Of a DNA stretch of 64,000 nucleotides, positions 10,219 to 57,910 are shown one piece after another. The notes beneath the pieces are model-generated. The model saw only the letters and a program-made list of their open reading frames with translations, was not told the DNA's origin and searched no databases. A program made the position numbers and the translations under genes. The number at the start of each line of letters is the position of its first letter. Position 1 is the first letter of the stretch. Location of the stretch: contig NIVC01000178.1 in the NCBI GenBank assembly GCA_002269645.1, positions 1-64,000 of the forward strand. The letters are read 5' to 3'. The stretch comes from Macrostomum lignano (taxonomy: Eukaryota).

Positions 10219-13200
10219 CTAGCGAAACTCCGGCTTCAGAGTCCACATCCCGCTGGGCCGATCGAAGTCGCACATCTGTCGCAGCAGAGCTCGAAGCAGG
10301 TGGCCCTCGTCTGGTCGCAAAATCTCGCCAACTACGTCGCTACTCATACTACTTGAAGTAGAAAAGCTGAAATGCCTAGCAATCTCGGAGCTGTCCCTGC
10401 GGCAGTCCTGCACCAGCGTGTGAAACACTCGAATGCTGCTGGCCAGATCCACGGCGCGCCGGTTCAGACCGCCCGCCTGGCCGAGGCCAGCCGACTGTTG
10501 CTGCTGACGGCGGAGCCGGAGGTCGATGAGTAGGAACAGGTCGTCAGATGAGTAGCGAACTCGGCCAGTTGACAGCAGGGCGGCACCGGAGAAGTGGCTC
10601 TCGACTGAGTTGGGGCAGCGGCGGGTGGAACTACGAGCTAAGTATGTAGAGATCTCCAAATACGGTACAAAGTGAACTACTATAAGTAGTAACATAAAAA
10701 TGCGAAAACTTAATTTTAGAATCTAAAAATATCAAGTGATCATACTCCATTTTTAGAAGACCACGAAACAACGAGTGATCATCTTATGCAACATTTCTAA
10801 AAATAGAATTGACGCGCAAAACCTATATAGTTTATTCTATGCAATTTTCGAGAGGTCAAAATTCCAAAACGCAAATGAGTCACCTTCCCAAAATAACCTG
10901 TTTACCCCAAAAGTTTACTATAAATACAAGCCAAAATCCGAGTCAAAATCTCAGACTCGGACCTGCCTCCAAAGATGTTGAAGCTTGCTGGAACAGCTAA
11001 GCGAGGCTACATCTCTGAGGAAATAAATACCGTTCGGTAAGCCTTTGTTCGAGCCTTTGTTATTTGGATTACTGAGAGCGATTTTATTGCCGGCCGTTAT
11101 TGATCAGTTTATTCAACTGAGTTCATTGAATTTGAGGCCTCCCATTTTCCTAAGGGATTGGATGGGATCTGCGGACCGATTCCGATACCCTTAGAGGATT
11201 ATCGAGTTGATTGATTTTGGTTATCCTAGATTAACCGATAGGAGCACACCACTCCGATTCCGTTATTTCTAGAAGAAGACGCCTTTCTTGGAGGACCTCG
11301 TTATTATCACAGAAGTTGATCTTGTTATTAGGGCGCATTGTTGATATTGATTATTGAACCTAAGGCCTATATTGGTTTGCATTCGAGAAATACTGCGACG
11401 TCGCCAGACTTGATTGTTACGCTCTCACTTTCGGCCGATTCTAGACTTCAAGAAGATTCCTCCGGAGAAGAAGATTTAAAGAAACGAGCTCGGAGAACCT
11501 GCCCAACACAGAAGAGGAGCCCGCCACAGTAAGTGAACACCTTATTCTGTTCCCAGGCTCAAGTGTCTGGAAGTGGGAGTTTTCTGGAGACTGATCACCT
11601 CCCGAATCAACTCTTCAAGTATTTTATTGTGCGTGTAAGACAATTTTGCGGCTGGAAGCCACATCAGAAGTGTCATAAAATATCCCTAAAAGCAACACCG
11701 GGAGTGTCATAAAATATCCCCAAAAGCAACACCGGGAGTGTCATAAAATATCCCTAAAGGTGACACCGGGAGTGTCATAAAATATCCCCAAAAGCAACAC
11801 CGGGAGTGTCATAAAATATCCCTAAAGGTGACACCGGGAGTGTCATAAAATATCCCAAAAGCAACACCGGGAGTGTCATAAAATATCCCTAAAAGCAACA
11901 CCGGGAGTGTCATAAAATATCCCCAAAAGCAACACCGGGAGTGTCATAAAATATCCCTAAAAGCAACACCGGAAGTGTCATAAAATATCCCTAAAAGCAA
12001 CACCGGGAGTGTCATAAAATATCCCTAAAAGCAACACCGGGAGTGTCATAAAATATCCCCAAAAGCAACACCGGGAGTGTCATAAAATATCCCTAAAGGT
12101 GACACCGGGAGTGTCATAAAATATCCCCAAAAGCAACACCGGGAGTGTCATAAAATATCCCTAAAGGTGACACCGGGAGTGTCATAAAATATCCCCAAAA
12201 GCAACACCGGGAGTGTCATAAAATATCCCTAAAAGCAACACCGGGAGTGTCATAAAATATCCCCAAAAGCAACACCGGGAGTGTCATAAAATATCCCTAA
12301 AAGCAACACCGGAAGTGTCATAAAATATCCCTAAAAGCAACACCGGGAGTGTCATAAAATATCCCTAAAAGCAACACCGGGAGTGTCATAAAATATCCCT
12401 AAAAGCAACACCGGGAGTGTCATAAAATATCCCCAAAATCAACACCGGAAATTACGTTAAATGTTGCTTCAGACAACACCAAACATACAGTATTTGGTTG
12501 TCACTTGATAGCAACACCGGAAGTACCATTGGTTGTCACTTAAAGCAACACCGGAAGTACTATTTAGTTATCACTTAAAGCAACACCGGAAGTACTATTT
12601 GGTTGTCACTTGAAGCAACACCGGAAGTACCATTGGTTATCACTTAAAGCAACACCGGAAGTACTATTTAGTTATCACTTAAAGCAACACCGGAAGTACT
12701 ATTTGGTTGTCACTTGAAGCAACACCGGAAGTACTATTTGGTTATCACTTGAAGTAACACCGGAAGTACTATTTGGTTATCACTTAAAGCAACACCGGAA
12801 GTACTATTTAGTTATCACTTAAAGCAACACCGGAAGTACTATTTGGTTATCACTTAAAGCAACACCGGAAGTACTATTTGGTTGTCACTTGAAGCAACAC
12901 CGGAAGTACTATTTGGTTATCACTTAAAGCAATACTGGAAGTACTATTTGGTTATCACTTAAAGCAACACCGGAAGTACTATTTGGTTATTACTTAAAGC
13001 AACACTGGAAGTACTATTTAGTTATCACTTAAAGCAACACCGGAAGTACTATTTGGTTGTCACTTGAAGCAACACCGGAAGTACTATTTGGTTGTCACTT
13101 GAAGCAACACCGGAAGTACTATTTGGTTGTCACTTAAAGCAACACTGGAAGTACTATTTGGTTATTACTTAAAGCAACACTGGAAGTACTATTTAGTTAT

Positions 13201-16200
13201 CACTTAAAGCAACACCGGAAGTACTATTTGGTTGTCACTTGAAGCAACACCGGAAGTACTATTTGGTTGTCACTTGAAGCAACACCGGAAGTACTATTTA
13301 GTTATCACTTAAAGCAACACCGGAAGTACTATTTGGTTATTACTTAAAGCAACACTGGAAGTACTATTTAGTTATCACTTAAAGCAACACCGGAAGTACT
13401 ATTTGGTTGTCACTTGAAGCAACACCGGAAGTACTATTTGGTTGTCACTTGAAGCAACACCGGAAGTACTATTTGGTTGTCACTTGAAGCAACACCGGAA
13501 GTACTATTTGGTTGTCACTTGAAGCAACACCGGAAGTACTATTTGGTTATCACTTAAAGCAACACTGGAAGTACTATTTAGTTATCACTTAAAGCAACAC
13601 CGGAAGTACTATTTGGTTATCACTTAAAGCAACACTGGAAGTACTATTTGGTTATCACTTAAAGCAACACCGGAAGTAAAATTGGTTATCACTTAAAGGA
13701 ACACCGGAAATACTATTTGAATATCACTTGAAGCAACACCGGAAGTACTATTTGGTTGTCACTTGAGGTAACACACCGGAAGTGTCTATAACATCAAGCA
13801 ACATTTTTACCTTGGCCCTGAGCTGTTGAATCATCCAGCCGACACCAGAGCCAGCAGCGGCGCACCCGACCAAACTGCTTGACCGGCCCAGCGGCAGCGG
13901 CAGCAGCAGCAGAGGCAGCCAGTCGATCTCGCAGCGCTGCAACCGCCGCAGTCGCAGTCTCACTGGCCTGCCATTCGACCAGATCCACATCCGCTGGTCC
14001 GGGAGCTTCGATCACCTCCTGCAATACGGCGTCTTGCACGCCGCAACGAATCAACGCCCTCTCCAGTTTATTATTTGCACCGCTGGCTATTATACTACTG
14101 CCGCTAGACGGACCGGCAGTAGTAGATGCAGCCTTTGATTCTGTCTGCAACTTTGGTATCTTTGCTATTTTCGATTTCAATTTCTTTGCTTTGCCATCGA
14201 GAGCCGCCGGCGGCTTCCGCTTGGCCGGTGAGGCATCCAGACGGGCTTTGCGAAGTACTCGACGAACTTCAGCGTCAATTTGAGGATTTGAGCGTTCCGC
14301 TGCCTCAAGCCGGTGCTGACTGGCTCGCGGCACCAGGGCCGACACCAGGGGGTCCGCAGAGTCCGCTGCATCTCTGGAGGTCGACGGCCCGGCGCCGGTT
14401 TTGTCTGGTTAATTGAGAAGGGAATTATGGCTTTGATTCATACCTGGAGCATAATGAAATCCCAACTATTCTTCCCAATGGGATCAAGATTTACCTGGAT
14501 GATTATGAAATCCCAACGATTCTTCCCAATGAGATCAAGATTTACCTGGATCAAATTATGAAATCCCAAAGATTCTTCCCAATGAGATCAAGATTTACCT
14601 GTATCAAATTATGAAATCCCAAAGATTCTTCCCAATGGGATCAAGATTTACCTGGATCAAATTATGAAATCCCAACAATTCTTCCCAATGAGATCAAGAT
14701 TTACCTGAATAATTATGAAATCCCAACAATTCTTCCCAATGAGATCAAGATTTACCTGAATAATTATGAAATCCCAACAATTCTTCCCAATGAGATCAAG
14801 ATTTACCTGAATAATTATGAAATCCCAACAATTCTTCCCAATGAGATCAAGATTTACCTGAATAATTATGAAATCCCAACAATTCTTCCCAATGAGATCA
14901 AGATTTACCTGGATGAATATGAAATTCCAAAATTCTCTCCAATGGGATCAAGATTTACCTGGATCAAATTATGAAATCCCAAAATTCTCTCCAATGGGAT
15001 AAAGATTTACCTGGATCAAAATATGAAATCCCAAATATTCTTCCCAATAGGATAAAAATTTACCTGGATCAAAATATGAAATCCCAACTATTCTTCCCAA
15101 TAGGATAAAAATTTACCTGGATCAAAATATGAAATCCCAACTATTCTTCCCAATAGGATAAAAATTTACCTGGATAAAATTATGAAATCCAAAAATCTTT
15201 GCCAATAGGATCAAGATTTACCTGGATCGAAATATGAAATCCCAAAAGTTATTTGACTTTGAACAAGTATTAAATCTGATAAATTAAAGTGCTTTGGATT
15301 ACTTAAAATCTTGAACAGTGGTCTCACCCGAACCCCGCTGTCCATCTCCATAGTCGAACGCGGCCTGCTTTACCACAAACTCGATTCGATGGCCGTCGAC
15401 TTCCTGGCGCTTGGCGCCGCGAGCGCGTTTCCTGTCACCGCCGCTCTTGTCTTTGCTTTTCTTCTTCTTTTTCTTCTGCTTCTTCTCTTTACGACGGGAT
15501 TTCTCTTGAGCCGGCTCCCTGGTCTCGGCCGGCTCGGCCTCGGCGCCTGACGGGGCGCTAAATTCGCGCGCCACTTTGGCGCTTAACTTGCGCGCCAATT
15601 CGCGCAATTCTGCGCGTCTGCTGTCGGTCAACTGGGCCGCTGCGACCGGCGCTGCTGGGGGTGGTGAGATGAAGATTAAGTAATAAATATCATTTTCCAG
15701 AAAACTGTAAGGTGCAGAATGCAATTTAGCTAGAATTAACTTCAGGATCCAGCTAAACTTCAGGATCCAGCTAAACTTCGGGATCCAAATAGACTTCAGG
15801 ATCCAACTAAACTTCAAGATCCAAATAGACTTTAGGATCCAGCTAAACTTAAGGATCCAACTAAAAAACTTTAGGGTCAAACTAAAAAACTTTAGGGTCA
15901 AACTAAAAAACTTTAGGGTCAAACTAAAAAAACTTTAGGATCCAACTAAAAAACTTTAGGGTGCAAACTAAAAAACTTTAGGCTGCAAACTAAAAAAATT
16001 TAGGGTCCAAACTAAAAAAACTTTAGGGTCCAACTAACAAACTTTAGGGTGCAAACTAAAAAATTTTAGGGTCCAAACTAAACAACTTTAGGGTCCAACT
16101 AAGAAACTTTAGGGTGCAAACTAAAAAAACCTCTAACATTCGAGCTCGTAACTACATTAAACTTCATGGACCAAATAGGAAACTTCAGGACCAGACACGA

Positions 16201-16671
16201 AGTCAAGCAACAAAGTCCAACAAACAATCCAACACAAACCATCACTAGCGGACGACTCTTTCATCGCGTCCACATCGGTGGAGGCCGTCTCAGCTTCGCT
16301 GTCAGACGCTGCGCCCAGATCGACTCCGGCAGCTTCTTGACGCTGTCGCAAGGCGTCGAACCTGTTGGTGCTGGCCCCCGTGCCGGTGAACAGCGCCCTG
16401 GTCTCCGTGCCTTCGACGTCGTCTTTCAGAGCGAACAGCTCGTCTAAATTGTTGGCCTTGAAGAAGCGGCGCTGTCGAGGATCGCGAAGGATTCTGTTGG
16501 CCAGGAACTGCTTGAAGATCTGGCGATGGTAAACTTTCTCTTCGATTGTGCCGGAGGACAGCAGGCGGTAGATCACCACGTCTCTCTGCTGCCCGATGCG
16601 CCAGGCACGCTCTCGGGCCTGGTTGAGTGATTGATTAGATAGATAGATAGATAGATGATAGATAGATAGAC

Positions 16672-16711
<40 letters not shown>

Positions 16712-16726
16712 GATAGATAGATAGAC

Positions 16727-16766
<40 letters not shown>

Positions 16767-16805
16767 GATAGATAGATAGACAGATAGATAGATAGATAGA
16801 TAAAC

Positions 16806-16847
<42 letters not shown>

Positions 16848-17082
16848 CTAGATAGATAGATAGATAGATGATAGATAGATAGATAGATGATAGATAGATA
16901 GATATATATAGATGATAGATAGATAGATAGATAGATAGATAAATAGATAGATGGATGATAGATAGATAGATGATAGATAGATAGATAGATGATAGATAGA
17001 TAGATAGATAGATAAATAGATAGATGGATGATAGATAGATAGATGATAGATAGATAGATGATAGATAGATAGATAGATAGAT

Positions 17083-17137
<55 letters not shown>

Positions 17138-17580
17138 GATAGATAGATAGATAGATGATAGATAGATAGATAGATAGATAAATAGATAGATGGATGATAG
17201 ATAGATAGATGATAGATACATAGATAGATAGATAAATAGATAGATGGATGATAGATAGATAGATGATAGATAGATAGATGATAGATACATAGATAGATAG
17301 ATAAATAGATAGATGGATGATAGATAGATAGATGATAGATAGATAGATAGATAGATAAATAGATAGATGGATGATAGATAGATAGATGATAGATAGATAG
17401 ATAGATAGATAAATAGATAGATGGATGATAGATAGATAGATGATAGATAGATAGATAGATACTGTAGATGATAGATGATAGATAGATAGATAGATAGATA
17501 AATAGATAGATGGATGATAGATAGATAGATAGATAAATAGATAGATGGATGATAGATAGATGATAGATACATAGATAGAG

Positions 17581-17612
<32 letters not shown>

Positions 17613-20600
17613 TATTAATAAACGGATTGATTAAAGTTTCTCCCCATCAATCAAACCTGCAAATCCGTGCACGGATTCCAGTCGGGATCGAATATGATGA
17701 CCCGATTAGCCCCGGTCAAGTTGACTCCAATCCCGCCAACTCGCGAGGTCAGCAGGAACACAAACGTGCCAGGATCCGTATTGAACCTGTGCACCAGGGT
17801 CTGCCGGCTGCGTACGGCTGTGCCGCCGTCCATCCGCATGTAGGGATAGCCGCGCTTCTTCACGAACGCCTCCAGCACCCCCAGCATCCGGCGGCTCTGG
17901 CTGAACAGCAGCACTTTGTGACCATCCGAGCGCCAGGCCTTCAGCAGAGCGTCAACAACCAGCATCTTGCCGGAGCGCTTGTAGTAGCCGAATGTCAGAG
18001 ACTCGCGCGACGGCAGGCCGAACTTCTGCGGCGGCCCAGTTGACAGGTCCGGATGGTTGCAGATCTTGCGGAGGGTGGACAGGCCTGGGAATACCTGTGG
18101 GATTGGGGTGGTGGCGGGTTGTAAGCTATAGGACTGATTATTCATTTCCCTACCAAACCGTTTAAATGTTCTACCATTGTCTACCCACGTGTCTACCTAC
18201 TTAGTACTTGGCTGCCTAAACATCTACCTACCTGTCTAAAAATCTATCTACCTGTCTATCAAAATCTACCTGCCTAACTACCAATATATCAGTCTAATTT
18301 AATCTACCTGTCTACCCAAATCTACTGTCTACCCAAATCTACCCGTCTACCCTAATCTACTCTGTCAACCTTGATCTACCTGTCTACCCAAATCTACTGT
18401 CTACCCTAATCTACCCGTCTACCCTAATCTACTCTGTCAACCTTGATCTACCTATCTACCCAAATCTACTGTCTACCCTAATCTACCCGTCTACCCTAAT
18501 CTACCTGTCAACTGATCTACCTGTCTACCCTAATCTACCTGTCTACCCTAATCTACCTGTCTACCCTAATCTACCTGTCTACCCTAATCTACCTGTCTAC
18601 CCTAATCTACCTGTCTACCCTAATCTACCTGTCTACCCTAATCTACCTGTCTACCCTAATCTACCTGTCTACCCTAATCTACCTGTCTACCCTAATCTAC
18701 CTGTCTACCCTAATCTACCTGTCTACCCTAATCTATCTGTCTACTCAAACCCACCTGTCTACTCAAACCCACCTGCAACCCGAATCTACCTACCCACCTA
18801 AATCTACCTGTCTACCTAAATCTACCTGCTCACAAATCTACATATCGGCATACCAATTTATCTACCATTCTAGCGGTCTACCAATCCGCCTACACTACCT
18901 ACCTACAAATCTACCTATCAAGCTCTGTTCAGTAATCAACCGATCTGCTAATCTACCAAATAAACCTTACCATATAGCGACCCTCCAGAATCTGCCGGCA
19001 CTCCCTAGACGCCAGGTACTCCTTGTACACATCGCGTTGATAGTCAGACAGACGACAGAATAGCACCTGTTCGCTTTTGCCCGGCAATTGCAGGCGCACG
19101 TCCTCTTTCATTCGGCGCAATAGATAAGGATTGATGGTGTCCCGCAGGCTGCAGGCGCATCTGGTTTTGTATCAAGAAATAATTACCAGTGAATGAACAA
19201 ATTATCACTCCATTTGAACTATTCCATGCACTGCTATTTAGTTCTATTACTGTTAGTAGTAAATCTAGGAAAATTACTACGGGTCTACTGTCCAGCGGTC
19301 TAGAGCATTTATCTGTCAGGTGTAGACCTCTTAACCCCTAATTAGAGATCCCATCATCCAGGTATTAATCCTTAATTAAAGATCCCATCATCCAGGTACT
19401 AATCCCTAATTATAGATCCGATCATTAATCCCTAATTATAGATCCGATCATCCAGGTATTAATCATTAATTAGAGATCCCATCATCCAGGTATTAATCCA
19501 TAATTAGAGATCCCATCATCCAGCCATTAATCCATAATTAGAGATCCCATCATTCAGCCATTAATCCATAATTAGAGATCCCATCATCCAGGTATTAATC
19601 CATAATTAGAGATCCCATCATCCAGGTATTAATCCCTAATTAGAGATCCCATCACACAGCCATTAATCCCTAATTAGAGATCCGGTCATCCAGGTATTAA
19701 TCATTAATTAGAGATCCCATCATCCGGGTATTAATCATTAATTAAAGATCCCATCATCAAGGTATTAATCCCTAATTAGAGATCTTATCACACAGGTATT
19801 AATCCCTAATTAGAGATTCCATCACACAGGTATTAATCCCTAATTAAAGATCCCATCACACAGGTATTAATCCCTAATTAGAGATCCCATCATACAGACA
19901 TTAATCCCTAATTAGAGATCGCATCACCCAGTTAATAATAAAATATCTATAAATATACTATTAGCACATAAAGGCGGAACCAACCTGTAAGCCAATTCCA
20001 CCTGGAATTTGCTAGCGCTAGCGTAACCACCCTGTAGAATAGGGGTGGCCAGGTGCTGCATAAAGTCTTGCAGGTCGCCCAGTTTGCCAGGATAGACAAA
20101 GTCGAATAGAGACCAAAGTTCCTGGTATTGGGGGTTCGGTGTGATTGGTTTAAATTTGATATTTTTAACAGCTATTCAAATGCTTATTGATAAATTGTAT
20201 TTTTTAGCTTAAGTTGGTACTGTAAGTTGGTAAACAAATTGCAAAGTGTTAGGATATCACGAAGGCCATTAATTCAGCAGTATAAAACACACTTATTTTT
20301 AATAAGTAGTATATAACAGCCGCAATTAATCAGTAGTATACAACACACTCAATAATCAGTAGTATATAACACACACAAGCAATCAGTAGTATATAACACA
20401 CTCAATAATCAGTAGTATATAACACACAAGCAATCAGTAGTATATAACACACACAAGCAATCAGTAGTATATAACACACACAAGCAATCAGCAGTTTATA
20501 AAACACACAAGCAACAGTAGTATATAACACACTCAATAATCAGTAGTATATAACACACAAGCAATCAGTAGTATATAACACACACAAGCAATCAGCAGTA

Positions 20601-23600
20601 TATAAAACACTCAAGCAATCAGTAGTATATAACACACTCAAGCAATCAGTAGTATATAACACACTCAAGCAATCAGTAGTATATAACACACTCAAGCAAT
20701 CAGTAGTATATAACACACACAAGCAATCAGTAGTATATAACATACTCAAGCAATCAGTAGTATAAAACACTTTTAATTAATCAGTAGTATACAGCACAGT
20801 CAATTAATCAGTAGTATTAAAACACACTCAAGCAATCAGTAGTATAAAACACAATTAATCAGTAGTATACAGCACACTCAATTAATTAGTAAGTATATAA
20901 CACACCCAATTAATTAATCAGTAGTATTAAAACACACTCAAGCAATCAGTAGTATAAAACACAATTAATCAGTAAGTATATAACACACCCAATTAATTAA
21001 TCAGTAGTATTAAAACACACTCAAGCAATCAGTAGCATATATCAGTAGTTTAAGGTTAAAAAGTAGTATGTTCACCGCTCACCTTAAGATTATTTTGCAT
21101 CGGAGTACCGGATATAATTATCCTATGCGGCGTCGGGAACTGCTTGCAAGCGATAGTAACATCGCTAGTTGGATTCTTAATCCGATGGCCTTCGTCCAGG
21201 ATGACGTAATCCCATCTGTACTTTAACAGAATATCCCTATGCATAGTTAAGGTATTGTAGGTAGTCAGCAATATGCCGGGATGATTGGCAATGCTGTGCA
21301 CTAATTTAGCAGGTTTAGAGTAGCCGCTACCAGTAGAGTGCAGAATAGCCACCCGAAATCTCGGGTACCACTGTCGCAGCTCGCCAAGCCACTGCTGCAG
21401 CACGGTGCCCGGACAGGCGATTAGCACAGGGCCAAGACGAGGACCGCCTAGCCGGTTGTGACTGTAGGACAGGCCAGCCAATAGGGCAATCATTTGCACA
21501 GTTTTGCCCAGGCCCATCTGATCGCCCATAATACCGCCAACTCCCTGCAGTGATGTTGCATTGTGCTTGATTGTGTTTTCTTATACGAGTATGATATGAA
21601 TTTTTCAAAACAATCTATGGGTTTCTTATCCAGATCTTATAGACTTTTTATCCAGATCTATAGATTCCTCATCAAGATAGATATCTCATCAAGATCTAAA
21701 TATTCCTCATCAAAATCTATAGGTTCCTTATAATCAAGATCTATAGATTCCTCATCAAGATCTAAAGATTTCTCATCAAAATCTATAAATTCCTCATCAA
21801 GATCTAAAGATTTCTCATCAAAATCTATAAATTCATTATCAAGATCTATAGATTTCTCATCAAGATCTATAAATTCTTTATCAAGATCCATAGATTTCTC
21901 ATCAAGATATATAGATTTCTCATCAAGATCTATAGATTCCTCGTCGAGATCTTTAGATTTCTCTTAAAGATCTATAGATTTCTTATCAAGATCTGTAGAT
22001 TTCTTATCAAGATCTGTAGATTTCTTATCAAGATCCATAGATTCCCCATCAAGATCTATAGATTTCTCTTTAAGATCTAAAGATTCCTTATCAAGATCTA
22101 TAGATTTTTCATCAAGATTTATAGATTCCTCATCAAGATCTATAGATTTTTTATTAAGACCTATAGATTCCTTATCAAGATTGGTAGATTCCACGTCCGG
22201 TATACTAAAATGGTTTGTCTAGATCTGAGTACTAACAAATATCAATCATGTAAAGTACTCAAAACCCTCCAACCTGCCTGAGAGTGCAGCTCCCTCAGCC
22301 AGCGCACGGCCACTCGCTGATAAGGAAACAAAGACTGCCAGATTTTTCTGGGCAAAGCGAACGCCAAACCATCTGGCAGGCCTTCTAATTGCATCGGCAA
22401 ATCGTCGGATTCATCGTTAAAGTCATCGCCGCTGCCGCCGCCACCGTCCTCCAGACGAACCTGCCTGTCGATGAGTTCGCTGCGATTCAGACGGGCGATG
22501 CGCCTCTCGTAGGCCAGTAGGCTGGCGTCATCCAGCAGAGGACGGGCTCGCTGTTGCTGCTGCTGCTGATGCTGAGCCTCCTGATGAAGCTCCGAGGATG
22601 CCGCTGAAGAAGGCGACTCTGGAGGCGACTCCTCCACAAGGCGAACTGACTGTCTTCGACGTTGCTGGTGTTGCTTCTGCTGCTGTCGAGAGCGCTTTGT
22701 TGCAGGGACGCTTCGCGTGCTTGAATGGTCCACCTGATTAATTCAGATAGGCCATAAACATCTGAGAAAGATATCTGTTAGCTCTTGTTAGGATAGCTCG
22801 TACAAAGACTTGCATTACATCGAAACAAAGACTAGTTGCTTCTCTTAATAGACACGAATTGTGACAGGAAACAAAGTCTACAACTATGGTCCAGTATAAA
22901 CGCAGAGTCAGAAGCAGACAAAAATAAAGACTCCTCTACTTCTGTATCGGCTCTAATCAAAACCAGAGGAAAAACAAAGACTCCTCTACTTCTGTATCGG
23001 CTCTAATCAAAACCAGAGGAAAAACAAAGACTCCTCTACTTCTGTATCGGCTCTAATCAAAACCAGAGGAAAAACAAAGACTCCTCTACTTCTGTATCGG
23101 CTCTAATCAAAACCAGAGGAAAAACAAAGACTACTGCACTATTGACGCTGGTAATGAATAAGCAAGCCAATCTCAACAATGTAAACAAACCTCAACACAA
23201 ACTGCTGGCCGCTTCACAGCCACAGGCCTCTCAATTGAAGGCGCGGCAGCGGCCCTGCCAACTCCGGCGAATCCCATGTCGCAATCCGCATCCCCAGTTG
23301 CTGCAACCCGATTCGTCGTGCCAGCAGCCTCAGCTTCGGCAACAGCTTCCGCTTCTAAAGATGCAGCTTCGATTCGTTCCTTAGTAGCTCGACGCCTCGC
23401 CTCCAACGTTTGCAACTGGCGGACGCGAGCCTCGGCCGCCGCTTCCATCGAACGAATTCGACGCGTCTTGGCCGGATCGCAGCTTCCAGACTCGGCATCT
23501 CGCAGAGCCGCATCAAGTTGAGCCTCGCAGCTGGCCAGATCCCGACGAGCGCTATCGGCGTCGGATTCGATGCGAGCCAATTGAGCTCGAAGTCCGGCCA

Positions 23601-23807
23601 ATTCTGCTGCTCTTCGACGCTCAAGTTCGCCGCTGAGCTGGCGGACAACGGCGGAGTCGAGTTCGGCTCGGTCGTATTGGCGAACTCCGGCTAGGCTGCT
23701 CAGAGCGGCCTCGCTGGCTGCGCGAGGCGGCAGAGTCGGTGGCGGCGGTGGCGGCAGCATGCCAGACTCTCTACCATCTTCATCAGCCGCCAGCTCTCCT
23801 TCTTGCT

Positions 23808-23838
<31 letters not shown>

Positions 23839-23850
23839 AGGCTGCAGCAT
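10219..23850 (-). CDS. ERCC6: DNA excision repair protein ERCC-6 / CSB / Rad26 (Snf2-family ATPase), ~1353 aa
   Basis: Model complement(join(10219..10637,13811..14404,15328..15654,16240..16618,17657..18094,18971..19160,19985..20121,21083..21544,22278..22733,23191..23850)), 4062 nt, in frame. Motifs [98 protein letters not shown] and a CSB-type C-terminus LLRQMCDF...WTLKPEF. The exon 1, 2 and 9 donors are uncertain by a few codons. Confidence 0.93.
11669..12450. repeat. 34-bp minisatellite, ~23 copies (ERCC6 intron 9)
   Basis: Unit GAGTGTCATAAAATATCCCTAAAAGCAACACCGG. Confidence 0.95.
12510..13785. repeat. 35-bp minisatellite, ~36 copies (ERCC6 intron 9)
   Basis: Unit AAGTACTATTTGGTTGTCACTTGAAGCAACACCGG. 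Confidence 0.95.
14452..15245. repeat. 51-52-bp minisatellite, ~15 copies (ERCC6 intron 8)
   Basis: Unit AATTATGAAATCCCAACAATTCTTCCCAATGAGATCAAGATTTACCTGAAT. Confidence 0.92.
15735..16130. repeat. Adjacent 18-bp and 21-bp minisatellites (ERCC6 intron 7)
   Basis: AACTTCAGGATCCAGCTA followed by AACTAAAAAACTTTAGGGTCA units. Confidence 0.9.
16637..17612. repeat. (GATA)n microsatellite (ERCC6 intron 6)
   Basis: About 1 kb of imperfect GATA; source of the spurious YLSI-repeat ORF. Confidence 0.97.
18290..18800. repeat. 18-bp minisatellite (ERCC6 intron 5)
   Basis: Unit ATCTACCTGTCTACCCTA. Confidence 0.93.
19335..19915. repeat. 34-bp minisatellite (ERCC6 intron 4)
   Basis: Unit ATTAATCCCTAATTAGAGATCCCATCATCCAGGT. 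Confidence 0.92.
20300..21050. repeat. 27-bp minisatellite (ERCC6 intron 3)
   Basis: Unit AATCAGTAGTATATAACACACTCAAGC. Confidence 0.92.
21620..22190. repeat. 21-bp minisatellite (ERCC6 intron 2)
   Basis: Unit ATCAAGATCTATAGATTTCTC; source of the spurious DLDEKSI-repeat ORFs. Confidence 0.92.
22925..23130. repeat. 50-bp tandem repeat, ~3.5 copies (ERCC6 intron 1)
   Basis: AAAGACTCCTCTACTTCTGTATCGGCTCTAATCAAAACCAGAGGAAAAAC repeated exactly. Confidence 0.93.
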
Positions 23851-25497
23851 GTGGAATTAAGTTTATAGACCTGCGAGTTCTTTCTCGAGGTGAGGCTGCA
23901 GCATGTGGAATTAAATTTATAGACCTGCGAGTTCTTTCTCGAGGTGAGGCTGCAGCATGTGGAATTAAATTTATAGACCTGCGAGTTCTTTCTCGAGGTG
24001 AGGCTGCAGCATGTGGAATTAAATTTATAGACCTGCGAGTTCTTTCTCGAGGTGAGGCTGCAGCATGTGGAATTAAATTTATAGACCTGCGAGTTCTTTC
24101 TCGAGGTGAGGCTGCAGCATGTGGAATTAAGTTTATAGACCTGCGAGTTCTTTCTCGAGGTGAGGCTGCAGCATGTGGAATTAAGTTTATAGACCTGCGA
24201 GTTCTTTCTCGAGGTGAGGCTGCAGCATGTGGAATTAAGTTTATAGACCTGCGAGTTCTTTCTCGAGGTGAGGCTGCAGCATGTGGAATTAAGTTTATAG
24301 ACCTGCGAGTTCTTTCTCGAGGTGAGGCTGCAGCATGTGGAATTAAGTTTATAGACCTGCGAGTTCTTTCTCGAGGTGAGGCTGCAGCATGTGAAATTAA
24401 ATTTATAGACCTGCGAGTTCTTTCTCGAGGTGAGGCTGCAGCATGTGGAATTAAGTTTATAGACCTGCGAGTTCTTTCTCGAGGTGAGGCTGCAGCATGT
24501 GGAATTAAGTTTATAGACCTGCGAGTTCTTTCTCGAGGTGAGGCTGCAGCATGTGGAATTAAGTTTATAGACCTGCGAGTTCTTTCTCGAGGTGAGGCTG
24601 CAGCATGTGGAATTAAGTTTATAGACCTGCGAGTTCTTTCTCGAGGTGAGGCTGCAGCATGTGGAATTAAGTTTATAGACCTGCGAGTTCTTTCTCGAGG
24701 TGAGGCTGCAGCATGTGGAATTAAGTTTATAGACCTGCGAGTTCTTTCTCGAGGTGAGGCTGCAGCATGTGGAATTAAGTTTATAGACCTGCGAGTTCTT
24801 TCTCGAGGTGAGGCTGCAGCATGTGGAATTAAGTTTATAGACCTGCGAGTTCTTTCTCGAGGTGAGGCTGCAGCATGTGGAATTAAATTTATAGACCTGC
24901 GAGTTCTTTCTCGAGGTGAGGCTGCAGCATGTGGAATTAAGTTTATAGACCTGCGAGTTCTTTCTCGAGGTGAGGCTGCAGCATGTGGAATTAAGTTTAT
25001 AGACCTGCGAGTTCTTTCTCGAGGTGAGGCTGCAGCATGTGGAATTAAGTTTATAGACCTGCGAGTTCTTTCTCGAGGTGAGGCTGCAGCATGTGGAATT
25101 AAGTTTATAGACCTGCGAGTTCTTTCTCGAGGTGAGGCTGCAGCATGTGGAATTAAGTTTATAGACCTGCGAGTTCTTTCTCGAGGTGAGGCTGCAGCAT
25201 GTGGAATTAAGTTTATAGACCTGCGAGTTCTTTCTCGAGGTGAGGCTGCAGCATGTGGAATTAAGTTTATAGACCTGCGAGTTCTTTCTCGAGGTGAGGC
25301 TGCAGCATGTGGAATTAAGTTTATAGACCTGCGAGTTCTTTCTCGAGGTGGATGGAATCAATCGCAGGGGTTGAGACCTCTGAACCTTCTGCTGATGATG
25401 ATGAGGCTGCAGCATGTGGAATTAAGTTTATAGACCTGCGAGTTCTTTCTCGAGGTGGATGGAATCAATCGCAGGGGTTGAGACCTTTGAACCTTCT
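23837..25497. repeat. 54-bp array (~28 copies) containing the ERCC6 start codon, plus an adjacent 107-bp duplication
   Basis: Unit GAGGCTGCAGCATGTGGAATTAAGTTTATAGACCTGCGAGTTCTTTCTCGAGGT, nearly invariant, 23837-25350. Positions 25351 and 25458 start duplicate flanks GATGGAATCAATCGCAGGGGTTGAGACC. Confidence 0.97.
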
Positions 25498-28767: not shown

Positions 28768-31370
28768 CCCAGTGAAAAAAATGATATGGATTCCATGTGG
28801 ATTTTTCATATGAAATCCATATGCGCATTTGTCTCCGTCCATCCATGTGGAATCAAGATATGGATTCCACATGGAAGATCCATATGGAAGTAATTATGTA
28901 TTTCACATAGAATCCACATTGTCATTGAGTAAGCAGCCATTATACTGGTTGCCATAATAAATTGTTGCATCCTAAATCTCAAAATAATACCAGATCTCAA
29001 AATTTCATACGAACCCCAGATCTCAATAGGCCCTACCATATAAAATAAACTGAAACACAGATAAAACACTAGCTATAGCCAAAAATATTTCTGCACAAAA
29101 ATTCAAAATTCAATATTTAAAAACGATGTAAGGTGTATTTATGTACAGTAGTGAGTCATTGGCACACAAAGAATAAACACACTGATGTAAATATTGATAT
29201 CTTTAGAGTTGCACTGCGCATATGATATAATATATAATTTGAAATTGACATTGTCAATAGCATTAATTAATTAACAATAATATAATGCATCAGAATTAGA
29301 ACAGTCAGAAACATGCTGCTGCCAATTGCCAGAATGCTGCTTCTTCAGGTCAGGTGAGCAACCTTAGAAAAGAAAGGGTTTAAATTACAGAATTTTATAA
29401 CAGATTGATGACAGATTTTATAATAGATTTTGATAGATTTTGATGACAGAAAAAAATCAGTTTATAACTAAAACTTACCATTGCTTCACAAAAGGTAGCA
29501 TTTGAGATATTAAATTCAAATTCCAAGTAGCTTTGCAAGCTTCTTCAAATGCAAGACCAAGGTGACATCCAAGTTTGAGGATGGGCCATGTAATGTTAGG
29601 CATAAATAAAATAGAAAAATAATTGTTGCCAATTAAGATTGATAAATAATATTGATATAATTCATAAAACTAATTTATTGATGAATACTTATAAAAAAAG
29701 TTTATTTTAAAATTAACTAGGCCTAAGTCCTAGGTTTATTTTTTATGCGCAAAGTATGCATAGGCCTATGCACCCTAAATTTTAAAATCCCACCTTGAAA
29801 ATTGAAAATAAAAAGTGGATACAGTTTAGGTGCGATCTCATTACCTATTTTTTTGTTGAAGCCTTATTTGCACTGCCTTCATATAAGAAAAAAGAGAAAC
29901 TGCATTCTAAGCCTTAAAATTATAAAACCCTGAAAGTAAGCATAGGGTATGATTTTGCACCTTGTCTCTAGCAAAAAAGAAAACTCTACCTAAGTCAACC
30001 AATAAAATTACCAATAAAATAATAAGTACAAAAAGAATTAATAAATGTTTCTATAAATTTAATTTTTTATTTTAAAATTGATTTTAGACTATAAAGTATT
30101 TAGGCAAAGCAATGCATGTTTTTTATATTTGCTAGCCTAGTATGATTAAACATTAGGCCTAAGCGGCCTAAGCCTAAATAGCTATGCCCTATGGCTATTA
30201 AATTCTGGTCTTGGCCTAAATCAGATCAAATTTACAATAATTTAATACTTATTTATAATAGCAACCTTAGGGGTCTGCTAGGCTAGCTATGCCAAAAGCA
30301 AGTTGCAAGTGTAATTGCAAAGAATTATTTATTATAATTAATAATATCCATATACTAAAAATGAAAATCTTGCTTGTTTGTATGCAATTGATTAGAGAAA
30401 AATTGTTTTTAAAAAATGCAACAAGTCCAAAAGATGCTAATAGGCTTTTTTGAAGAAAATCATAAATTAATAGATTTTTAACAGATTAACTAGATTGACT
30501 AGTCACAATTCACAAAGTCAAGCTAGTCCTAACCTTAATTAAAATAGAAGGACCTAAATTTTAGGCTAAATTGATAGTTATAGGCCTAGCTTAAAATAGG
30601 CCTAATGAGCATACATATAAATAGATAGGTAGGACTAAGAGGAAATTATGAACTTCTAAAGGCCTATTCAAGTTAAAAAATGAGTAGCCAATCTATGGAC
30701 ATGGCCATGGGATTCCTAGAAATTGGATAAGCCTAAATAAATTTATCATGGATTTTACCAAAAGTATTAGGCCTATCTATGATAAAATACTGATTTATCT
30801 AATTTCTAATCCCATGGAGGCCATGGCCTTATAAGTTATTGCCTATAGGCTAGGTCTACTAAAATTTTTAAGGTGCTTAAATAGCCATAAACAAGGCAAT
30901 TTATGTTTCAAGGCCTTGAACCAAGACATTGACGAATTTAAAATAAAATTAATTTCATTTTAAAAAGCACGAAACGTTTTTTATTGTTTACTTCTATTTT
31001 GTCTATTTTAACAAACAGTGTCTTATTGTCCGATTATAATTTAGCTTTAAGATATTAATTTTTACTTAAAAGCATATAAATATAATAATTTATTATAGTA
31101 ATTTCATAAAAACGTCTGAATGTGGTGTATCACAGTTTTTTTATCGAAGTGGATTCCATGTTGAATCAATATACGCTTATTTCTCTTGAATTCCTTGTAA
31201 AATCCACATCAACATTAGGACAGTAAAAATAAAAAAAATAATGCATAAAAAATACTTTGCATACCATTATGTCATCTTTAAGTCATTAATTTGCAAAAAT
31301 TAAAGAAACATTTAAATTCCACATGGCCACGTGGAACCCACGTGGAATCCATAAATCATTTTTCACTGGG
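28768..31370. mobile_element. Non-autonomous TIR transposon, CMC/EnSpm-like, 2.6 kb
   Basis: Starts CCCAGTGAAAAAAATGATATGGATTCCATGTGG and ends CCACGTGGAATCCATAAATCATTTTTCACTGGG. 2-bp AA duplication; clustered TGGATTCCAC-type subterminal repeats at both ends; AT-rich interior with no ORF. Confidence 0.75.
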
Positions 31371-31947
31371 AATCCTGGCCCTGCGAGAAAGGTGAGTTTC
31401 TTTTTTAATCATACAAGCAGCTGCATCAGCCTATCCATTCCTCGCGGTTGAGCCCCTTACTACTAACACGTACTGTGATATGCGCGAATGCAGATTTTGC
31501 TTCTGTCGGCCACACCAATATATGTATATCTATATGCAGTTACAGGTATTCAAAGACTTTGGAAAAATTGTTATGGCGCTCCACTAGTAGCCCCTTCTTA
31601 AAAGCAATTAGTTTCGCGCTTCCTCACAACTTGTTGACGTCGACACCTATAGCTGCCATGTTCCCATGCAATTTTAGCTATTCCCAACACAACAATTTGA
31701 CACAACCTACTAGCTGCATGTGTACATGTGCTTCGTCACACACGGCTCGTAAATTGGCACAAAAATCACAAGTTAAAATTAAAAATGCTCCACATTTACT
31801 TCTTGCAGTAATCCTTGACTTTAAGCTTTTTGCCCCCCTGAACCCACACGACTACGATGCAGGGGAGCCATATGCACTTTGGGCCGCTCCCCGCTGGTGG
31901 CCCCAAAGCTGCGTGGCGCTCCCTAAAGAAGCGCCTATAATATCAAA

Positions 31948-56068: not shown

Positions 56069-56367
56069 CTGTGCCAGCGGCCCAGGCTCGATTCCAAACG
56101 CAGTCACATAATTTAGGGCTAAATTTGAATCTCAGCTTGGCTCTGAGATTGCAGTTAACGGTGCAGTTAACGCCATTGAGGGCCAAGTGAAGATGTGTAC
56201 ATGCCTAACGATAAATAAAGTTAAGGCCGCTGTACACTCCTGTGTGAGTGTGTGCCTGTGCGTATGACTGCGTACGCATCCGCGCGCTTGTGTGCCTGCT
56301 CAGGGGAGTCGGCGGAATGGGCAGCAATGACTCTCGCCGGTTGTGTGACAATGTCGCTTAAAGTGCG
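56069..56367 (+). mobile_element. SINE-like dispersed repeat, copy 2
   Basis: Homologous to 2275-2571; B-box-like GGCTCGATTCC at the 5' end. Confidence 0.6.
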
Positions 56368-56513
56368 CCTTTAAACTGAACACTCGCAAGCTTCCTAATA
56401 ACTACCCTAAGAGCTCTTAAGAGTCCAAGTGACGTGTAAGGGGTCAAGGATGGCTACGCATCACCTAATCGGCTGGCAAAGTATGTGGCACACCCTTTAC
56501 ACGTGATATAGCT

Positions 56514-57910
56514 TTGGCGCCCCTGGTGCTGGCGCCCCTGGTGCTGGCGCCCCTGGTGCTGGCGCCCCTGGTGCTGGCGCCCCTGGTGCTGGCGCCCCTG
56601 GTGCTGGCGCCCCTGGTGCTGGGGCCCCTGGTGCTGAAGCCCCTGGTGCTAAAGCCCCTGGTGCTAAAGCCCCTGGTGCTAAAGCCCCTGGTGCTAAAAC
56701 CCCTGGTGCTGGCGCCCCTGGTGCTGGCGCCCCTGGTGCTGGCGCCCCTGGTGCTGGCGCCCCTGGTGCTGGCGCCCCTGGTGCTGGCGCCCCTGGTGCT
56801 GGCGCCCCTGGTGCTGGCGCCCCTGGTGCTGGCGCCCCTGGTGCTGGCGCCCCTGGTGCTGGCGCCCCTGGTGCTGGCGCCCCTGGTGCTGGCGCCCCTG
56901 GTGCTGGCGCCCCTGGTGCTGGCGCCCCTGGTGCTGGCGCCCCTGGTGCTGGCGCCCCTGGTGCTGGCGCCCCTGGTGCTGGCGCCCCTGGTGCTGGCGC
57001 CCCTGGTGCTGGCGCCCCTGGTGCTGGCGCCCCTGGTGCTGGCGCCCCTGGTGCTGGCGCCCCTGGTGCTGGCGCCCCTGGTGCTGGCGCCCCTGGTGCT
57101 GGCGCCCCTGGTGCTAAAGCCTCTGGTTCTAAAGACACTGGTTCTAAAGCCCCTGGTTCTAAAGCCTCTGGTTCTAAAGACACTGGTTCTAAAGCCCCTG
57201 GTTCTAAAGAACCTGGTTCTAAAGACACTGGTTCTAAAGCCCCTGGTTCTAAAGACACTGGTTCTAAAGCCCCTGGTTCTAAAGAACCTGGTTCTAAAGA
57301 CACTGGTTCTAAAGCCCCTGGTTCTAAAGAACCTGGTTCTAAAGACACTGGTTCTGGCGCCCCTGGTTCTAAAGACACTGGTTCTAAAGCCCCTGGTTCT
57401 AAAGACACTGGTTCTAAAGCCCCTGGTTCTAAAGCCTCTGGTTCTAAAGACACTGGTTCTAAAGCCCCTGGTTCTAAAGAACCTGGTTCTAAAGACACTG
57501 GTTCTAAAGCCTCTGGTTCTAAAGACACTGGTTCTAAAGCCCCTGGTTCTAAAGCCTCTGGTTCTAAAGACACTGGTTCTAAAGCCCCTGGTTCTAAAGA
57601 ACCTGGTTCTAAAGACACTGGTTCTAAAGCCCCTGGTTCTAAAGACACTGGTTCTAAAGCCCCTGGTTCGAAAGCCTCTCGTTCTAAAGACACTGGTTCT
57701 AAAGCCCCTGGTTCTAAAGAACCTGGTTCTAAAGACACTGGTTCTAAAGACACTGGTTCTGGCGCCCCTGGTTCTAAAGCCCCTGGTGCTGGCGCCCCTG
57801 GTGCTGGCGCCCCTGGTGCTGGCGCCCCTGGTGCTGGCGCCCCTGGTGCTGGCGCCCCTGGTGCTGGCGCCCCTGGTGCTAAAGAACCTGATGCTAAAGC
57901 CAATCCCTGG
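56514..57910. repeat. 15-bp minisatellite with variant blocks
   Basis: CCCTGGTGCTGGCGC blocks flank a central block of (C/A)CTGGTTCTAAAG(C/A) variants. Confidence 0.96.

What the first reader, a model, noticed from the sequence alone, without database searches (positions are those of the whole stretch)
23837..25497. The ERCC6 start codon is amplified ~28 times, giving a uORF ladder or a new intron
Seen on the minus strand: each 54-nt unit is ...CTCGCAG|GTCTATAAACTTAATTCCAC-ATG-CTG-CAG-CCT-C. The last unit supplies the real ATG (23850). Every other unit encodes MLQPHLEKELAGL-stop, in frame with CSB. A further ATG at 25415, from a 107-bp duplication, opens a 571-codon out-of-frame ORF that overlaps the CSB start. 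Each unit also has a TATAAA and a CAG|GT. Inference, three testable options: (a) copy-number-tuned translational repression of a repair gene, (b) the array is spliced out from first GT to last AG, as in the AG|GT tandem-duplication model of intron gain, or (c) each CAG is a trans-splice acceptor and only the last gives protein.
Basis: partly seen in the sequence, partly recalled or inferred. Interest (0 to 1): 0.72.

Follow-up and report, generated by a model that had tools for sequence, protein, structure and literature searches.

The report
Repeat array multiplying a trans-splice site
In one of the two copies of the flatworm Macrostomum lignano's ERCC6 (CSB) repair gene, a young 54-base repeat has copied the gene's 5' end 29 times, but what it most likely multiplies is a spliced-leader acceptor site in RNA that is cut off and discarded, so it is probably a harmless by-product of a very repeat-rich genome rather than a regulatory device.

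Summary
Window 23837-25348 holds 28 near-identical 54-bp units, and 25349-25497 holds a 107-bp duplication. Together they give 29 copies of CAC-ATG-CTGCAG-CCTCA, and the last runs into exon 1 of an intact ERCC6 gene.

The genome is Macrostomum lignano, assembly Mlig_3_7. A second, inverted and colinear copy of the whole region lies on contig C177. It has a single unit and an equally intact gene, so the array is private to one homeologous copy. It is also young: 7 substitutions in 1512 nt. It is one of 24 minisatellite arrays that cover 26% of the window.

M. lignano trans-splices about 30% of its genes with a 35-nt spliced leader (SL) that ends in ATG. The published acceptor motif is [T/C]TNCAG. 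The unit's CTGCAG|CCT fits that motif; CTCGCAG|GT does not. The depositors' transcript-based model for the C177 copy is 5'-partial and starts exactly at CCT, and the leader's AUG would be in frame there.

My reading is therefore that the array multiplies a trans-splice acceptor inside the outron. The last acceptor would still give normal mRNA, and the genomic ATG is probably not the start codon in the trans-spliced mRNA.

Options (a) and (b) are poorly supported. I could reach no RNA reads, so the splicing step is inferred. Interest is moderate.

The parts
23837..25348 (-). 28 tandem units of exactly 54 bp. Each holds TATAAA, CAC-ATG, the putative trans-splice acceptor CTGCAG| and the first 5 nt (CCTCA) of exon 1.
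   Evidence: Of the 28 units, 22 are identical. Six carry C>T at unit position 30, and one of those has a second change, giving 7 substitutions in 1512 nt.
25349..25497 (-). Older 107-bp tandem duplication: copy 1 at 25497-25391, and the start of copy 2 at 25390-25349. Copy 1 holds ATG 25415 followed by CAT x3 CAG x2, a short version of the His/Gln run.
   Evidence: 95 of the first 96 positions are identical. The junction ...CATCAGC|AGAAGGTTCAG lies in an AGAAGG (at least AG) microhomology, which is present both upstream (TTGAGAAGGTT) and in the CDS (CAAGAAGGAG).
23842..23847 (-). CTGCAG, the last (productive) copy of the putative SL trans-splice acceptor. The mature mRNA body would start at 23841 (CCT).
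   Evidence: It fits [T/C]TNCAG (PMC8629364). The NCBI model for the C177 copy begins with P = CCT. The SL ends in ATG, giving the in-frame join ATG|CCT CAT.
23848..23850 (-). Genomic ATG that heads the long ORF ([10 protein letters not shown]...). It is in frame, 9 nt upstream of the putative acceptor, with in-frame TAA at -12 and -18.
   Evidence: Ab initio UniProt models use it (P0003). The transcript-based NCBI models do not.
23191..23841 (-). Exon 1 of ERCC6 (poorly conserved N-terminal part), with donor GAG|GTTTGT at 23190.
   Evidence: exact spliced mapping of P0121. The model itself starts at 23826.
10222..23826 (-). ERCC6/CSB gene as modelled by the depositors (PAA88686.1, BOX15_Mlig006870g2, 1333 aa, 5'-partial). 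It has 10 exons, and 9 minisatellite arrays lie within the 13794-25457 span of the gene.
   Evidence: the translation of the 10 exons equals P0121 exactly. Pfam. Homologs.
23700..25415 (-). 571-codon ORF running through the array, out of frame with ERCC6. It is a by-product of a repeat unit whose length is a multiple of 3; two minus-strand frames and one plus-strand frame are open.

Best explanation
The array is a young minisatellite, private to one homeologous copy of the M. lignano ERCC6 gene.

How it formed:
- Two successive tandem duplications at short microhomologies produced it: first 107 bp at AGAAGG, then 54 bp at CA.
- Slippage or unequal exchange then expanded the 54-bp unit to 28 copies (inferred).
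- The duplicated segment spans the last 49 nt of the outron, including the branch-like, AT-rich stretch and the acceptor CTGCAG|, plus the first 5 nt of exon 1.

How the mRNA is made (inferred):
- ERCC6 mRNA gets its 5' end by spliced-leader trans-splicing at CTGCAG|CCT.
- The 35-nt leader ends in AUG, and that AUG is in frame. The protein then starts M-P-H-H-H.
- The genomic ATG-CTG-CAG lies in the discarded outron.

What the array does (inferred):
- The array is 29 acceptors in a row.
- Adding a leader at any acceptor throws away everything upstream of it.
- So the last acceptor, whose 49-nt upstream context is identical to the others, still yields a normal mRNA at about its usual efficiency.
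- Transcripts whose most downstream splice is at an inner acceptor would carry SL-AUG-CCUCACCUCGAG... (MPHLEKELAGL-stop) followed by more short ORFs, and would be poorly translated.
- The net effect should be neutral to mildly hypomorphic. An intact single-unit copy of the gene elsewhere in this neopolyploid genome buffers any loss.

Shown here: the array, its privacy to one copy, its youth, the junctions, both genes intact, SL genes in the genome, the motif match and the frame.
Inferred: that the site is used, and which acceptors are used.
For: Array and unit structure.

Organism: best hits are M. lignano ERCC-6 (97-99%). The assembly size and scaffold count match Mlig_3_7 (PMC8629364; PMC5730564).

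Second copy of the region:
- C177 406001-461882 is colinear with the whole window in inverted orientation, at 92-99% identity. Colinearity still holds at C178 127-130 kb.
- C177 has one unit.
- Only these two ERCC6 exon-1 loci exist in the assembly.
- Joining the array's flanks in silico reproduces the C177 sequence, apart from 3 SNPs and the CAT/CAG-run length.
- The two encoded proteins are 1314/1333 identical and both are full length.

Repeat context:
- 24 arrays cover 26% of the window and 55% of the gene span.
- My crude unit matching found 17 of the 24 on C177 too. This array is not among them.
- Simple and tandem repeats make up 15% of the genome (PMC5730564).

Trans-splicing:
- The SL is CGGTCTCTTACTGCGAAGACTCAATTTATTGCATG, about 30% of genes are trans-spliced, and the acceptor motif is [T/C]TNCAG (PMC8629364).
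- There are 30 exact copies of the SL exon plus GTAAG in this genome, and 0 for the reversed control pattern.
- The annotation pipeline cuts transcripts at peaks of SL-read mapping (PMC5730564).
- PAA88723.1 (C177 copy) is 5'-partial and starts PHHHQQQQQ, that is, at the first base after CTGCAG. A random position fits the motif about 1 time in 512.
- Flatworm SL AUGs are known to serve as initiators (Cheng et al. 2006, as cited in PMC9851317).
Against: - No RNA read was seen. Trans-splicing at this site rests on a gene-model boundary, a motif match and the frame.
- The model for the window's own copy (PAA88686.1) starts at 23826 (HHQQQQQQ), not at 23841. That offset is what an ungapped projection of a C177-type transcript would give. 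So there is no independent evidence that the array-bearing copy is expressed or spliced at its last acceptor.
- The genomic ATG is in frame 9 nt upstream, with stop codons before it. It looks like a bona fide start and may be used on transcripts that are not trans-spliced.
- Inner acceptors could act as decoys if export is faster than use of the last site.
- The promoter and transcription start site are unknown.
- Copy number is unverified by reads.
Confidence: 0.55

Rival explanations
1. uORF ladder. The array is kept in the mature 5' leader. Its 28 upstream AUGs (27 in-frame 13-codon uORFs and one 571-codon overlapping ORF) repress translation of CSB in proportion to copy number. This would be either an evolved tuning device or simply a hypomorphic or null copy.
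For: The uORFs and the overlapping ORF exist as described. The AUG context CACAUGC is weak, so some leaky scanning is conceivable. The genome holds a second intact copy, so a crippled copy could persist. Transcripts spliced only at inner acceptors would carry such uORFs.
Against: Neither transcript-based model has any 5' UTR reaching into the array; both are 5'-partial at or just after CAG|CCT. Trans-splicing at the last acceptor would remove the whole ladder. The array is absent from the sister copy and is very young (7 changes in 1512 nt), so there is no sign of a conserved device. It is one of 24 arrays in the window. With 28 AUGs in front, output would be near zero rather than tuned.
Confidence: 0.15
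2. New cis intron. The array is spliced out from the first CAG|GT to the last CAG|, which regenerates the single-unit sequence, as in the AGGT tandem-duplication model of intron gain.
For: Each unit has CAG|GT. Splicing from first to last would restore the ancestral sequence exactly.
Against: The donor GTCTAT has A at +5. Eight of this gene's 9 donors have G there, and the species' enriched donor motif is GT[G/A]AG (PMC8629364). The sister copy reads CAG|GC at that site. The 20 nt before CTCGCAG| are purine-rich (GAGAAAGAAC), unlike the gene's real acceptors. The model also needs a cis 5' exon upstream, and no annotation supports one.
Confidence: 0.03
3. Assembly artefact. The array, or its length, was produced by mis-assembly of long noisy reads in a repeat-rich polyploid genome, and the true locus has one or a few units.
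For: 36% of the assembly length is reported to lie in chimeric scaffolds, and the assembly is redundant (PMC10733133). Copy number could not be checked against reads.
Against: The array is 1.6 kb. By my own knowledge of PacBio read lengths, not checked here, single reads of the PacBio data behind the assembly (PMC8629364) should span it. The units show a structured, non-random pattern of variants: T-type units at positions 10, 19 and 25-28. The flanks join cleanly to unique sequence on both sides and match C177. A nested 107-bp duplication with its own junction is unlikely to be created by an assembler.
Confidence: 0.07
4. Internal promoter units. Each unit carries its own core promoter (TATAAA) and start site, so transcription can begin inside the array and the last unit gives a normal short-leader mRNA.
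For: TATAAA is present in every unit.
Against: TATAAA starts only 17 nt before the ATG. A start site about 25-30 nt downstream of it would fall inside the coding sequence, after the ATG, in the ancestral single-unit state (reasoned from the usual spacing of TATA boxes, not from a tool result). The AT-rich stretch is better explained as the region just upstream of a splice acceptor. The transcript models start at the acceptor, not at a plausible initiator.
Confidence: 0.05

Closest known systems
Flatworm spliced-leader trans-splicing in which the leader's 3'-terminal AUG serves as the initiator (Cheng et al. 2006 J Biol Chem, as cited in PMC9851317; 'slORFs')
   Same: The leader ends in AUG. 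The acceptor CTGCAG|CCT puts that AUG in frame with the ORF, with no stop between. The transcript-based model lacks a genomic start codon.
   Different: The acceptor module is present 29 times in tandem here. A genomic in-frame ATG also sits 9 nt upstream. Use of the site is inferred, not observed.
The '5'-UTR sanitisation' idea for SL trans-splicing (Hastings 2005; Danks and Thompson 2015, as cited in PMC8629364), and repeat accumulation in M. lignano outrons and operon spacers (PMC8629364)
   Same: Upstream AUGs and a repeat expansion lie in sequence that trans-splicing would discard, which would explain why they are tolerated.
   Different: The repeat is made of the acceptor itself plus 5 nt of exon, so it creates competing splice sites rather than inert spacer.
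Minisatellites (VNTRs) in gene 5' regions, such as the human INS VNTR and the CSTB dodecamer expansion (from my own knowledge)
   Same: Head-to-tail units of tens of bp, copy number differing between gene copies, and an origin by slippage or unequal exchange.
   Different: Those lie in promoters and act on transcription. This one overlaps the 5' end of the mRNA body and an apparent start codon.
Intron gain by tandem duplication of an AGGT-containing segment (Rogers 1989, from my own knowledge)
   Same: A tandem duplication contains CAG|GT, so first-donor to last-acceptor splicing would restore the original sequence.
   Different: The splice signals are poor, the sister copy has GC, and no upstream cis exon is known.
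GCN4/ATF4-type control by multiple uORFs (from my own knowledge)
   Same: Several short uORFs would precede the main ORF if the array were retained in the mRNA.
   Different: There are 28 uORFs spaced only 12 nt from the next AUG, there is no conservation, and they are probably not in mature mRNA.

Membership tests
Minisatellite / VNTR | Head-to-tail tandem units of about 10-100 bp | tested here: met
   TRF period 54, 30 copies, score 2982. There are 28 exact 54-bp units.
Minisatellite / VNTR | Copy number differs between homologous loci | tested here: met
   The window has 28 units plus the 107-bp duplication; the C177 copy has 1 unit. Variation among individuals was not tested.
SL trans-spliced gene using the leader's AUG (slORF) | The organism has SL RNA genes whose exon ends in AUG and is followed by a donor | tested here: met
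   30 exact matches to the 35-nt SL plus GTAAG in G000, and 0 for the control pattern. The sequence is from PMC8629364.
SL trans-spliced gene using the leader's AUG (slORF) | An acceptor matching the species' trans-splice motif lies at the 5' end of exon 1 | tested here: met
   CTGCAG|CCT fits [T/C]TNCAG. CTCGCAG|GT does not.
SL trans-spliced gene using the leader's AUG (slORF) | The leader's AUG is in frame with the ORF, with no stop between | tested here: met
   ATG|CCT CAT CAT ... continues the ERCC6 frame.
SL trans-spliced gene using the leader's AUG (slORF) | SL-containing reads or cDNAs are joined at that site | not testable with these tools
   Only indirect evidence: the 5'-partial model PAA88723.1 starts at CCT, and the pipeline cuts at SL-read peaks. 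No RNA-derived fragments were found.
uORF-regulated mRNA | uORFs are present in the mature 5' leader | not testable with these tools
   The uORFs exist in the DNA, but neither gene model has a leader containing them.
uORF-regulated mRNA | uORFs are conserved in related gene copies | tested here: not met
   The sister copy on C177 has none of the array's uORFs.
Intron created by AGGT tandem duplication | Donor and acceptor are competent by the standards of the host's introns | tested here: not met
   GTCTAT has no +5 G, against 8 of 9 donors of this gene. The tract before the acceptor is purine-rich. C177 reads GC. The species motif is GT[G/A]AG.
ERCC6/CSB (SNF2-family ATPase) | SNF2-related ATPase domain plus Helicase_C, with best hits to ERCC6 orthologs | tested here: met
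   Pfam hits. Named ERCC-6 hits at 58-64% identity over residues 300-860.

The most novel reading that the evidence does not exclude
The 29 tandem acceptors act as a decoy ladder. A sizeable share of the array-bearing copy's transcripts would end up trans-spliced at inner units and carry SL-AUG-initiated short ORFs. One homeolog of a DNA-repair gene would then be turned down after transcription, in proportion to repeat number. This would be a repeat-based route to dosage adjustment, or to silencing of duplicates, in a young polyploid.
Probability: 0.1. Interest if true: 0.6.

Novelty: new member of a known kind. Interest (0 to 1): 0.38.

Why it matters
If the reading is right, this locus is a ready-made natural experiment on two open points about spliced-leader trans-splicing. 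One is how the machinery chooses among identical acceptors in a row. The other is whether trans-splicing really shields genes from upstream AUGs and from repeat growth in their 5' regions (the 'sanitisation' idea).

The organism has public SL-read data, and transgenesis works in it. The two gene copies can be told apart by their CAT-run length (6 versus 3), so the test is cheap.

The locus also warns annotators. In this species an in-frame genomic ATG next to a CAG may not be the start codon. It says little about DNA repair itself.

Tried and rejected
- RNA-derived fragments: two protein-database searches with exon 1 found nothing. One used the whole exon and one the non-repetitive part 44-150. 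I was looking for products beginning MPHHH.
- Searches for ERCC6 or the two gene IDs found nothing, either in paper texts or in the held supplements of PMC5730564 and PMC5816591.
- Rfam on the whole window gave no family at gathering score.
One DNA search showed colinearity at 127-130 kb instead. Beyond window position 66.5 kb an inverted satellite blurs the alignment.
- I considered a dispersed satellite or transposon origin for the unit and rejected it. The 162-nt (three-unit) query hit only this array and the single unit on C177.
- I considered a true palindrome formed by C177 and C178 and rejected it. Both contigs run in parallel to about the same end point and differ by 1-10%, which fits the known homeologous redundancy of the assembly (PMC5730564, PMC10733133).
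Full report
OBSERVATION

The array is real. Tandem Repeats Finder reports 23837-25457, period 54, 30 copies, score 2982. Read on the minus strand, there are 28 units of exactly 54 bp at 25348-23837. Each unit reads CCTCGAGAAAGAACTCGCAGGTCTATAAACTTAATTCCAC-ATG-CTGCAGCCTCA.

An older 107-bp duplication precedes them. Copy 1 (25497-25391) and copy 2 (from 25390) are identical at 95 of their first 96 positions.

The motif CACATGCTGCAGCCTCA occurs 29 times. The last copy (ATG at 23850) heads a 225-codon ORF that is exon 1 of an SNF2-family gene. The 27 ATGs from 25308 to 23904 are in frame with that ORF and each encodes MLQPHLEKELAGL-stop. The ATG at 25415 is out of frame and opens a 571-codon ORF.

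THE GENE AND THE ORGANISM

- Pfam finds SNF2-rel_dom and Helicase_C in the downstream exons.
- A database search gives proteins named DNA excision repair protein ERCC-6 from many animals at 58-64% identity. Three Macrostomum lignano proteins score 97-99%.
- The assembly has 764,410,778 bases in 5269 contigs. The published Mlig_3_7 assembly has 764 Mb in 5270 scaffolds (PMC5730564; PMC8629364).
- The window's own depositor model is PAA88686.1 (BOX15_Mlig006870g2, 1333 aa, partial). I mapped it exactly onto the window as 10 exons, 23826 to 10222.

A SECOND COPY WITHOUT THE ARRAY

A genome-wide search with the unit found one further hit, a single unit on contig C177. Reading it shows the same upstream sequence, one unit, then ATGCTGCAGCCT-CATx3-CAGx4-CAA and the same exon 1.

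- The tail of C177 (406001-461882; the contig ends at 462809) is colinear with the entire window in inverted orientation, at 92-99% identity.
- Colinearity still holds at C178 127-130 kb against C177 334.5-337.4 kb.
- Exon 1 has only these two loci in the assembly.
- The two encoded proteins are 1314/1333 identical and both are full length.
- Joining the array's flanks in silico reproduces the C177 sequence, apart from 3 SNPs and the CAT/CAG-run length.

The array is therefore a clean amplification of resident sequence, private to one copy. The literature explains the two copies. The DV1 line is a highly inbred neopolyploid with three subgenomes (S, L1, L2) that differ by about 2% in SNPs and much more in indels. 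The assembly keeps them apart (PMC10733133; PMC5730564). The two copies are therefore better called homeologs than alleles.

ORIGIN AND AGE

- The 107-bp junction (...CATCAGC|AGAAGGTTCAG) lies in an AGAAGG, or at least AG, microhomology. That motif is found both upstream (TTGAGAAGGTT) and in the CDS (CAAGAAGGAG).
- The 54-bp junction (...GCCTCA|CCTCGAG) lies at a CA shared by ATCCA|CCTCGAG and GCCTCA|TCAT.
- This pattern is the signature of slippage or microhomology-mediated tandem duplication. Later expansion by slippage or unequal exchange is inferred.
- The 28 units differ from their consensus at 7 of 1512 positions. That is less than the divergence between the two copies in the flanks.
- Six units carry T at unit position 30, the base that C177 has.

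CONTEXT: A GENOME FULL OF SUCH ARRAYS

At score 200 or more, the window holds 24 separate arrays. They cover 26% of its bases and 55% of the 13794-25457 span of the ERCC6 gene. My crude unit matching found seventeen of them on C177 too, often with a different copy number, for example 24 versus 13 or 120 versus 211 copies. The 54-bp array is not among them. Simple and tandem repeats make up 15% of this genome (PMC5730564). An array is thus the expected kind of mutation here. Only its position is unusual.

WHAT THE ARRAY MOST LIKELY MULTIPLIES

M. lignano adds a 35-nt spliced leader, CGGTCTCTTACTGCGAAGACTCAATTTATTGCATG, to about 30% of its genes. The top motif at trans-splice acceptors is [T/C]TNCAG, and the cis donor motif is GT[G/A]AG (PMC8629364). 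The genome in hand has 30 exact copies of the leader plus GTAAG, and none of the reversed control pattern.

Each unit contains two CAGs. CTGCAG|CCT fits the acceptor motif. CTCGCAG|GT does not.

The annotation pipeline (TBONE) cuts transcripts at peaks of trimmed SL reads (PMC5730564). Its model for the C177 copy, PAA88723.1, is 5'-partial and starts PHHHQQQQQ, that is, at the first base after CTGCAG.

- If the transcript had included the genomic ATG, the ORF caller would have started at MLQP, as the ab initio UniProt model P0003 does.
- A random position matches the motif about once in 512.
- The leader's terminal ATG joined to CCT CAT CAT is in frame.
- Flatworm leader AUGs are known to act as initiators (Cheng et al. 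2006, cited in PMC9851317).

I therefore infer that ERCC6 mRNA starts by trans-splicing at CTGCAG|CCT. The genomic ATGCTGCAG would then be outron, and the array would be a row of 29 acceptor modules.

CONSEQUENCE (INFERRED)

Adding a leader at any acceptor discards everything upstream. The last acceptor has the same 49-nt upstream context as in the single-unit copy, so it should still make a normal mRNA. This follows from the trans-splicing mechanism as described in PMC8629364, which also gives the idea that trans-splicing clears upstream AUGs and frees upstream sequence to evolve.

Only transcripts whose most downstream splice is at an inner unit would carry short ORFs (SL-AUG CCU CAC CUC GAG ... 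UAA, giving MPHLEKELAGL). The expected effect is none to mild, and a second intact gene copy buffers it.

CAVEATS

- I saw no RNA reads.
- The model for the window's own copy begins at 23826 (HHQQQQQQ). This is exactly what an ungapped projection of a C177-type 5' end (P-H3-Q5) onto H6-Q6 gives once the mismatched first codon is clipped. It is therefore not independent evidence that the array copy is expressed.
- The in-frame genomic ATG, with stop codons just upstream, could be a working start on transcripts that are not trans-spliced.
- The copy number is not verified by reads. However, the structured pattern of variant units and the nested 107-bp duplication argue against an assembler artefact.

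- (a) uORF ladder. This needs the array in mature mRNA. No model has such a leader, the sister copy lacks the array, and 28 AUGs would abolish translation rather than tune it.
- (b) cis intron.
  - GTCTAT lacks the G at +5 found in 8 of this gene's 9 donors, and it does not fit GT[G/A]AG.
  - C177 reads GC there.
  - The tract before CTCGCAG is purine-rich.
- (c) trans-splicing with only the last unit productive. This is closest to my conclusion. The acceptor, however, is the CAG after the ATG (exon start at 23841, not 23870), and the start codon then comes from the leader.

VERDICT

This is a real, young minisatellite private to one copy. It most likely sits in discarded outron sequence and multiplies a trans-splice acceptor. 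As a kind of element it is ordinary for this genome. Its position makes it a neat, cheaply testable case for acceptor choice and for the protective role of trans-splicing. Interest is moderate (0.38). Confidence in the full mechanistic reading is 0.55.

Noticed in passing
window 1-64000 versus G000:C177:406001-461882 (loci L011-L017): The whole window has an inverted, colinear second copy at the end of the neighbouring contig, at 92-99% identity with many indels. Both contigs stop at about the same point. This fits the S/L1/L2 homeologous redundancy reported for this assembly.
   Followed up: partly
window 33323-34851 (ORF 33511-34656, + strand): This 1.5-kb segment is absent from the C177 copy. 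It carries a 381-codon ORF with Phage_integrase (3.2e-07) and DUF3504 (5.9e-06) matches. It looks like a Crypton-type tyrosine-recombinase element inserted next to a 31-bp minisatellite (33137-33323).
   Followed up: partly
window 28770-31371, 43743-46522, 56284-57531: Three further segments have no counterpart in C177. The last overlaps a 15-bp x 92 array (56519-57901) that also appears private to this copy.
   Followed up: no
window 32550-33131 (- strand): A fibrinogen C-terminal domain exon (Pfam 3.9e-34) lies on the same strand, about 8.7 kb upstream of the ERCC6 acceptor. Whether the two genes share a polycistronic transcript was not tested. The gene IDs (g2, g3) hint at multi-gene transcriptional units.
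   Followed up: no
window 22920-23132 (intron 1 of ERCC6): A 50-bp x 4.3 repeat at 99% identity is present with the same copy number in C177. It is unusually homogeneous compared with the other shared arrays.
   Followed up: no
C178:65089-69476 versus C177:399442-405461 (L032, L012-L013): Just beyond the window there is a satellite array of about 1 kb in C178 against about 5 kb in C177. A block in C178 lies in the opposite orientation, suggesting a local inversion or an assembly problem.
   Followed up: no
window 23821-23838 versus L011:5020-5028: The His run at the N-terminus is 6 CAT in the window copy and 3 in C177 (and 3 in the 107-bp duplicate). The Gln run is 6 versus 5, and a Pro run downstream also differs ([10 protein letters not shown] versus PPPPPLPP). 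These give handy markers to tell the two copies' transcripts apart.
   Followed up: partly
UniProt A0A1I8JJE9 (P0002), from the older ML2 assembly: The window-type copy was modelled there from an internal Met ([12 protein letters not shown]). The C177-type copy (P0003) was modelled from MLQPHHH. This is a weak hint that the older assembly also had something unusual upstream of the window-type copy.
   Followed up: no
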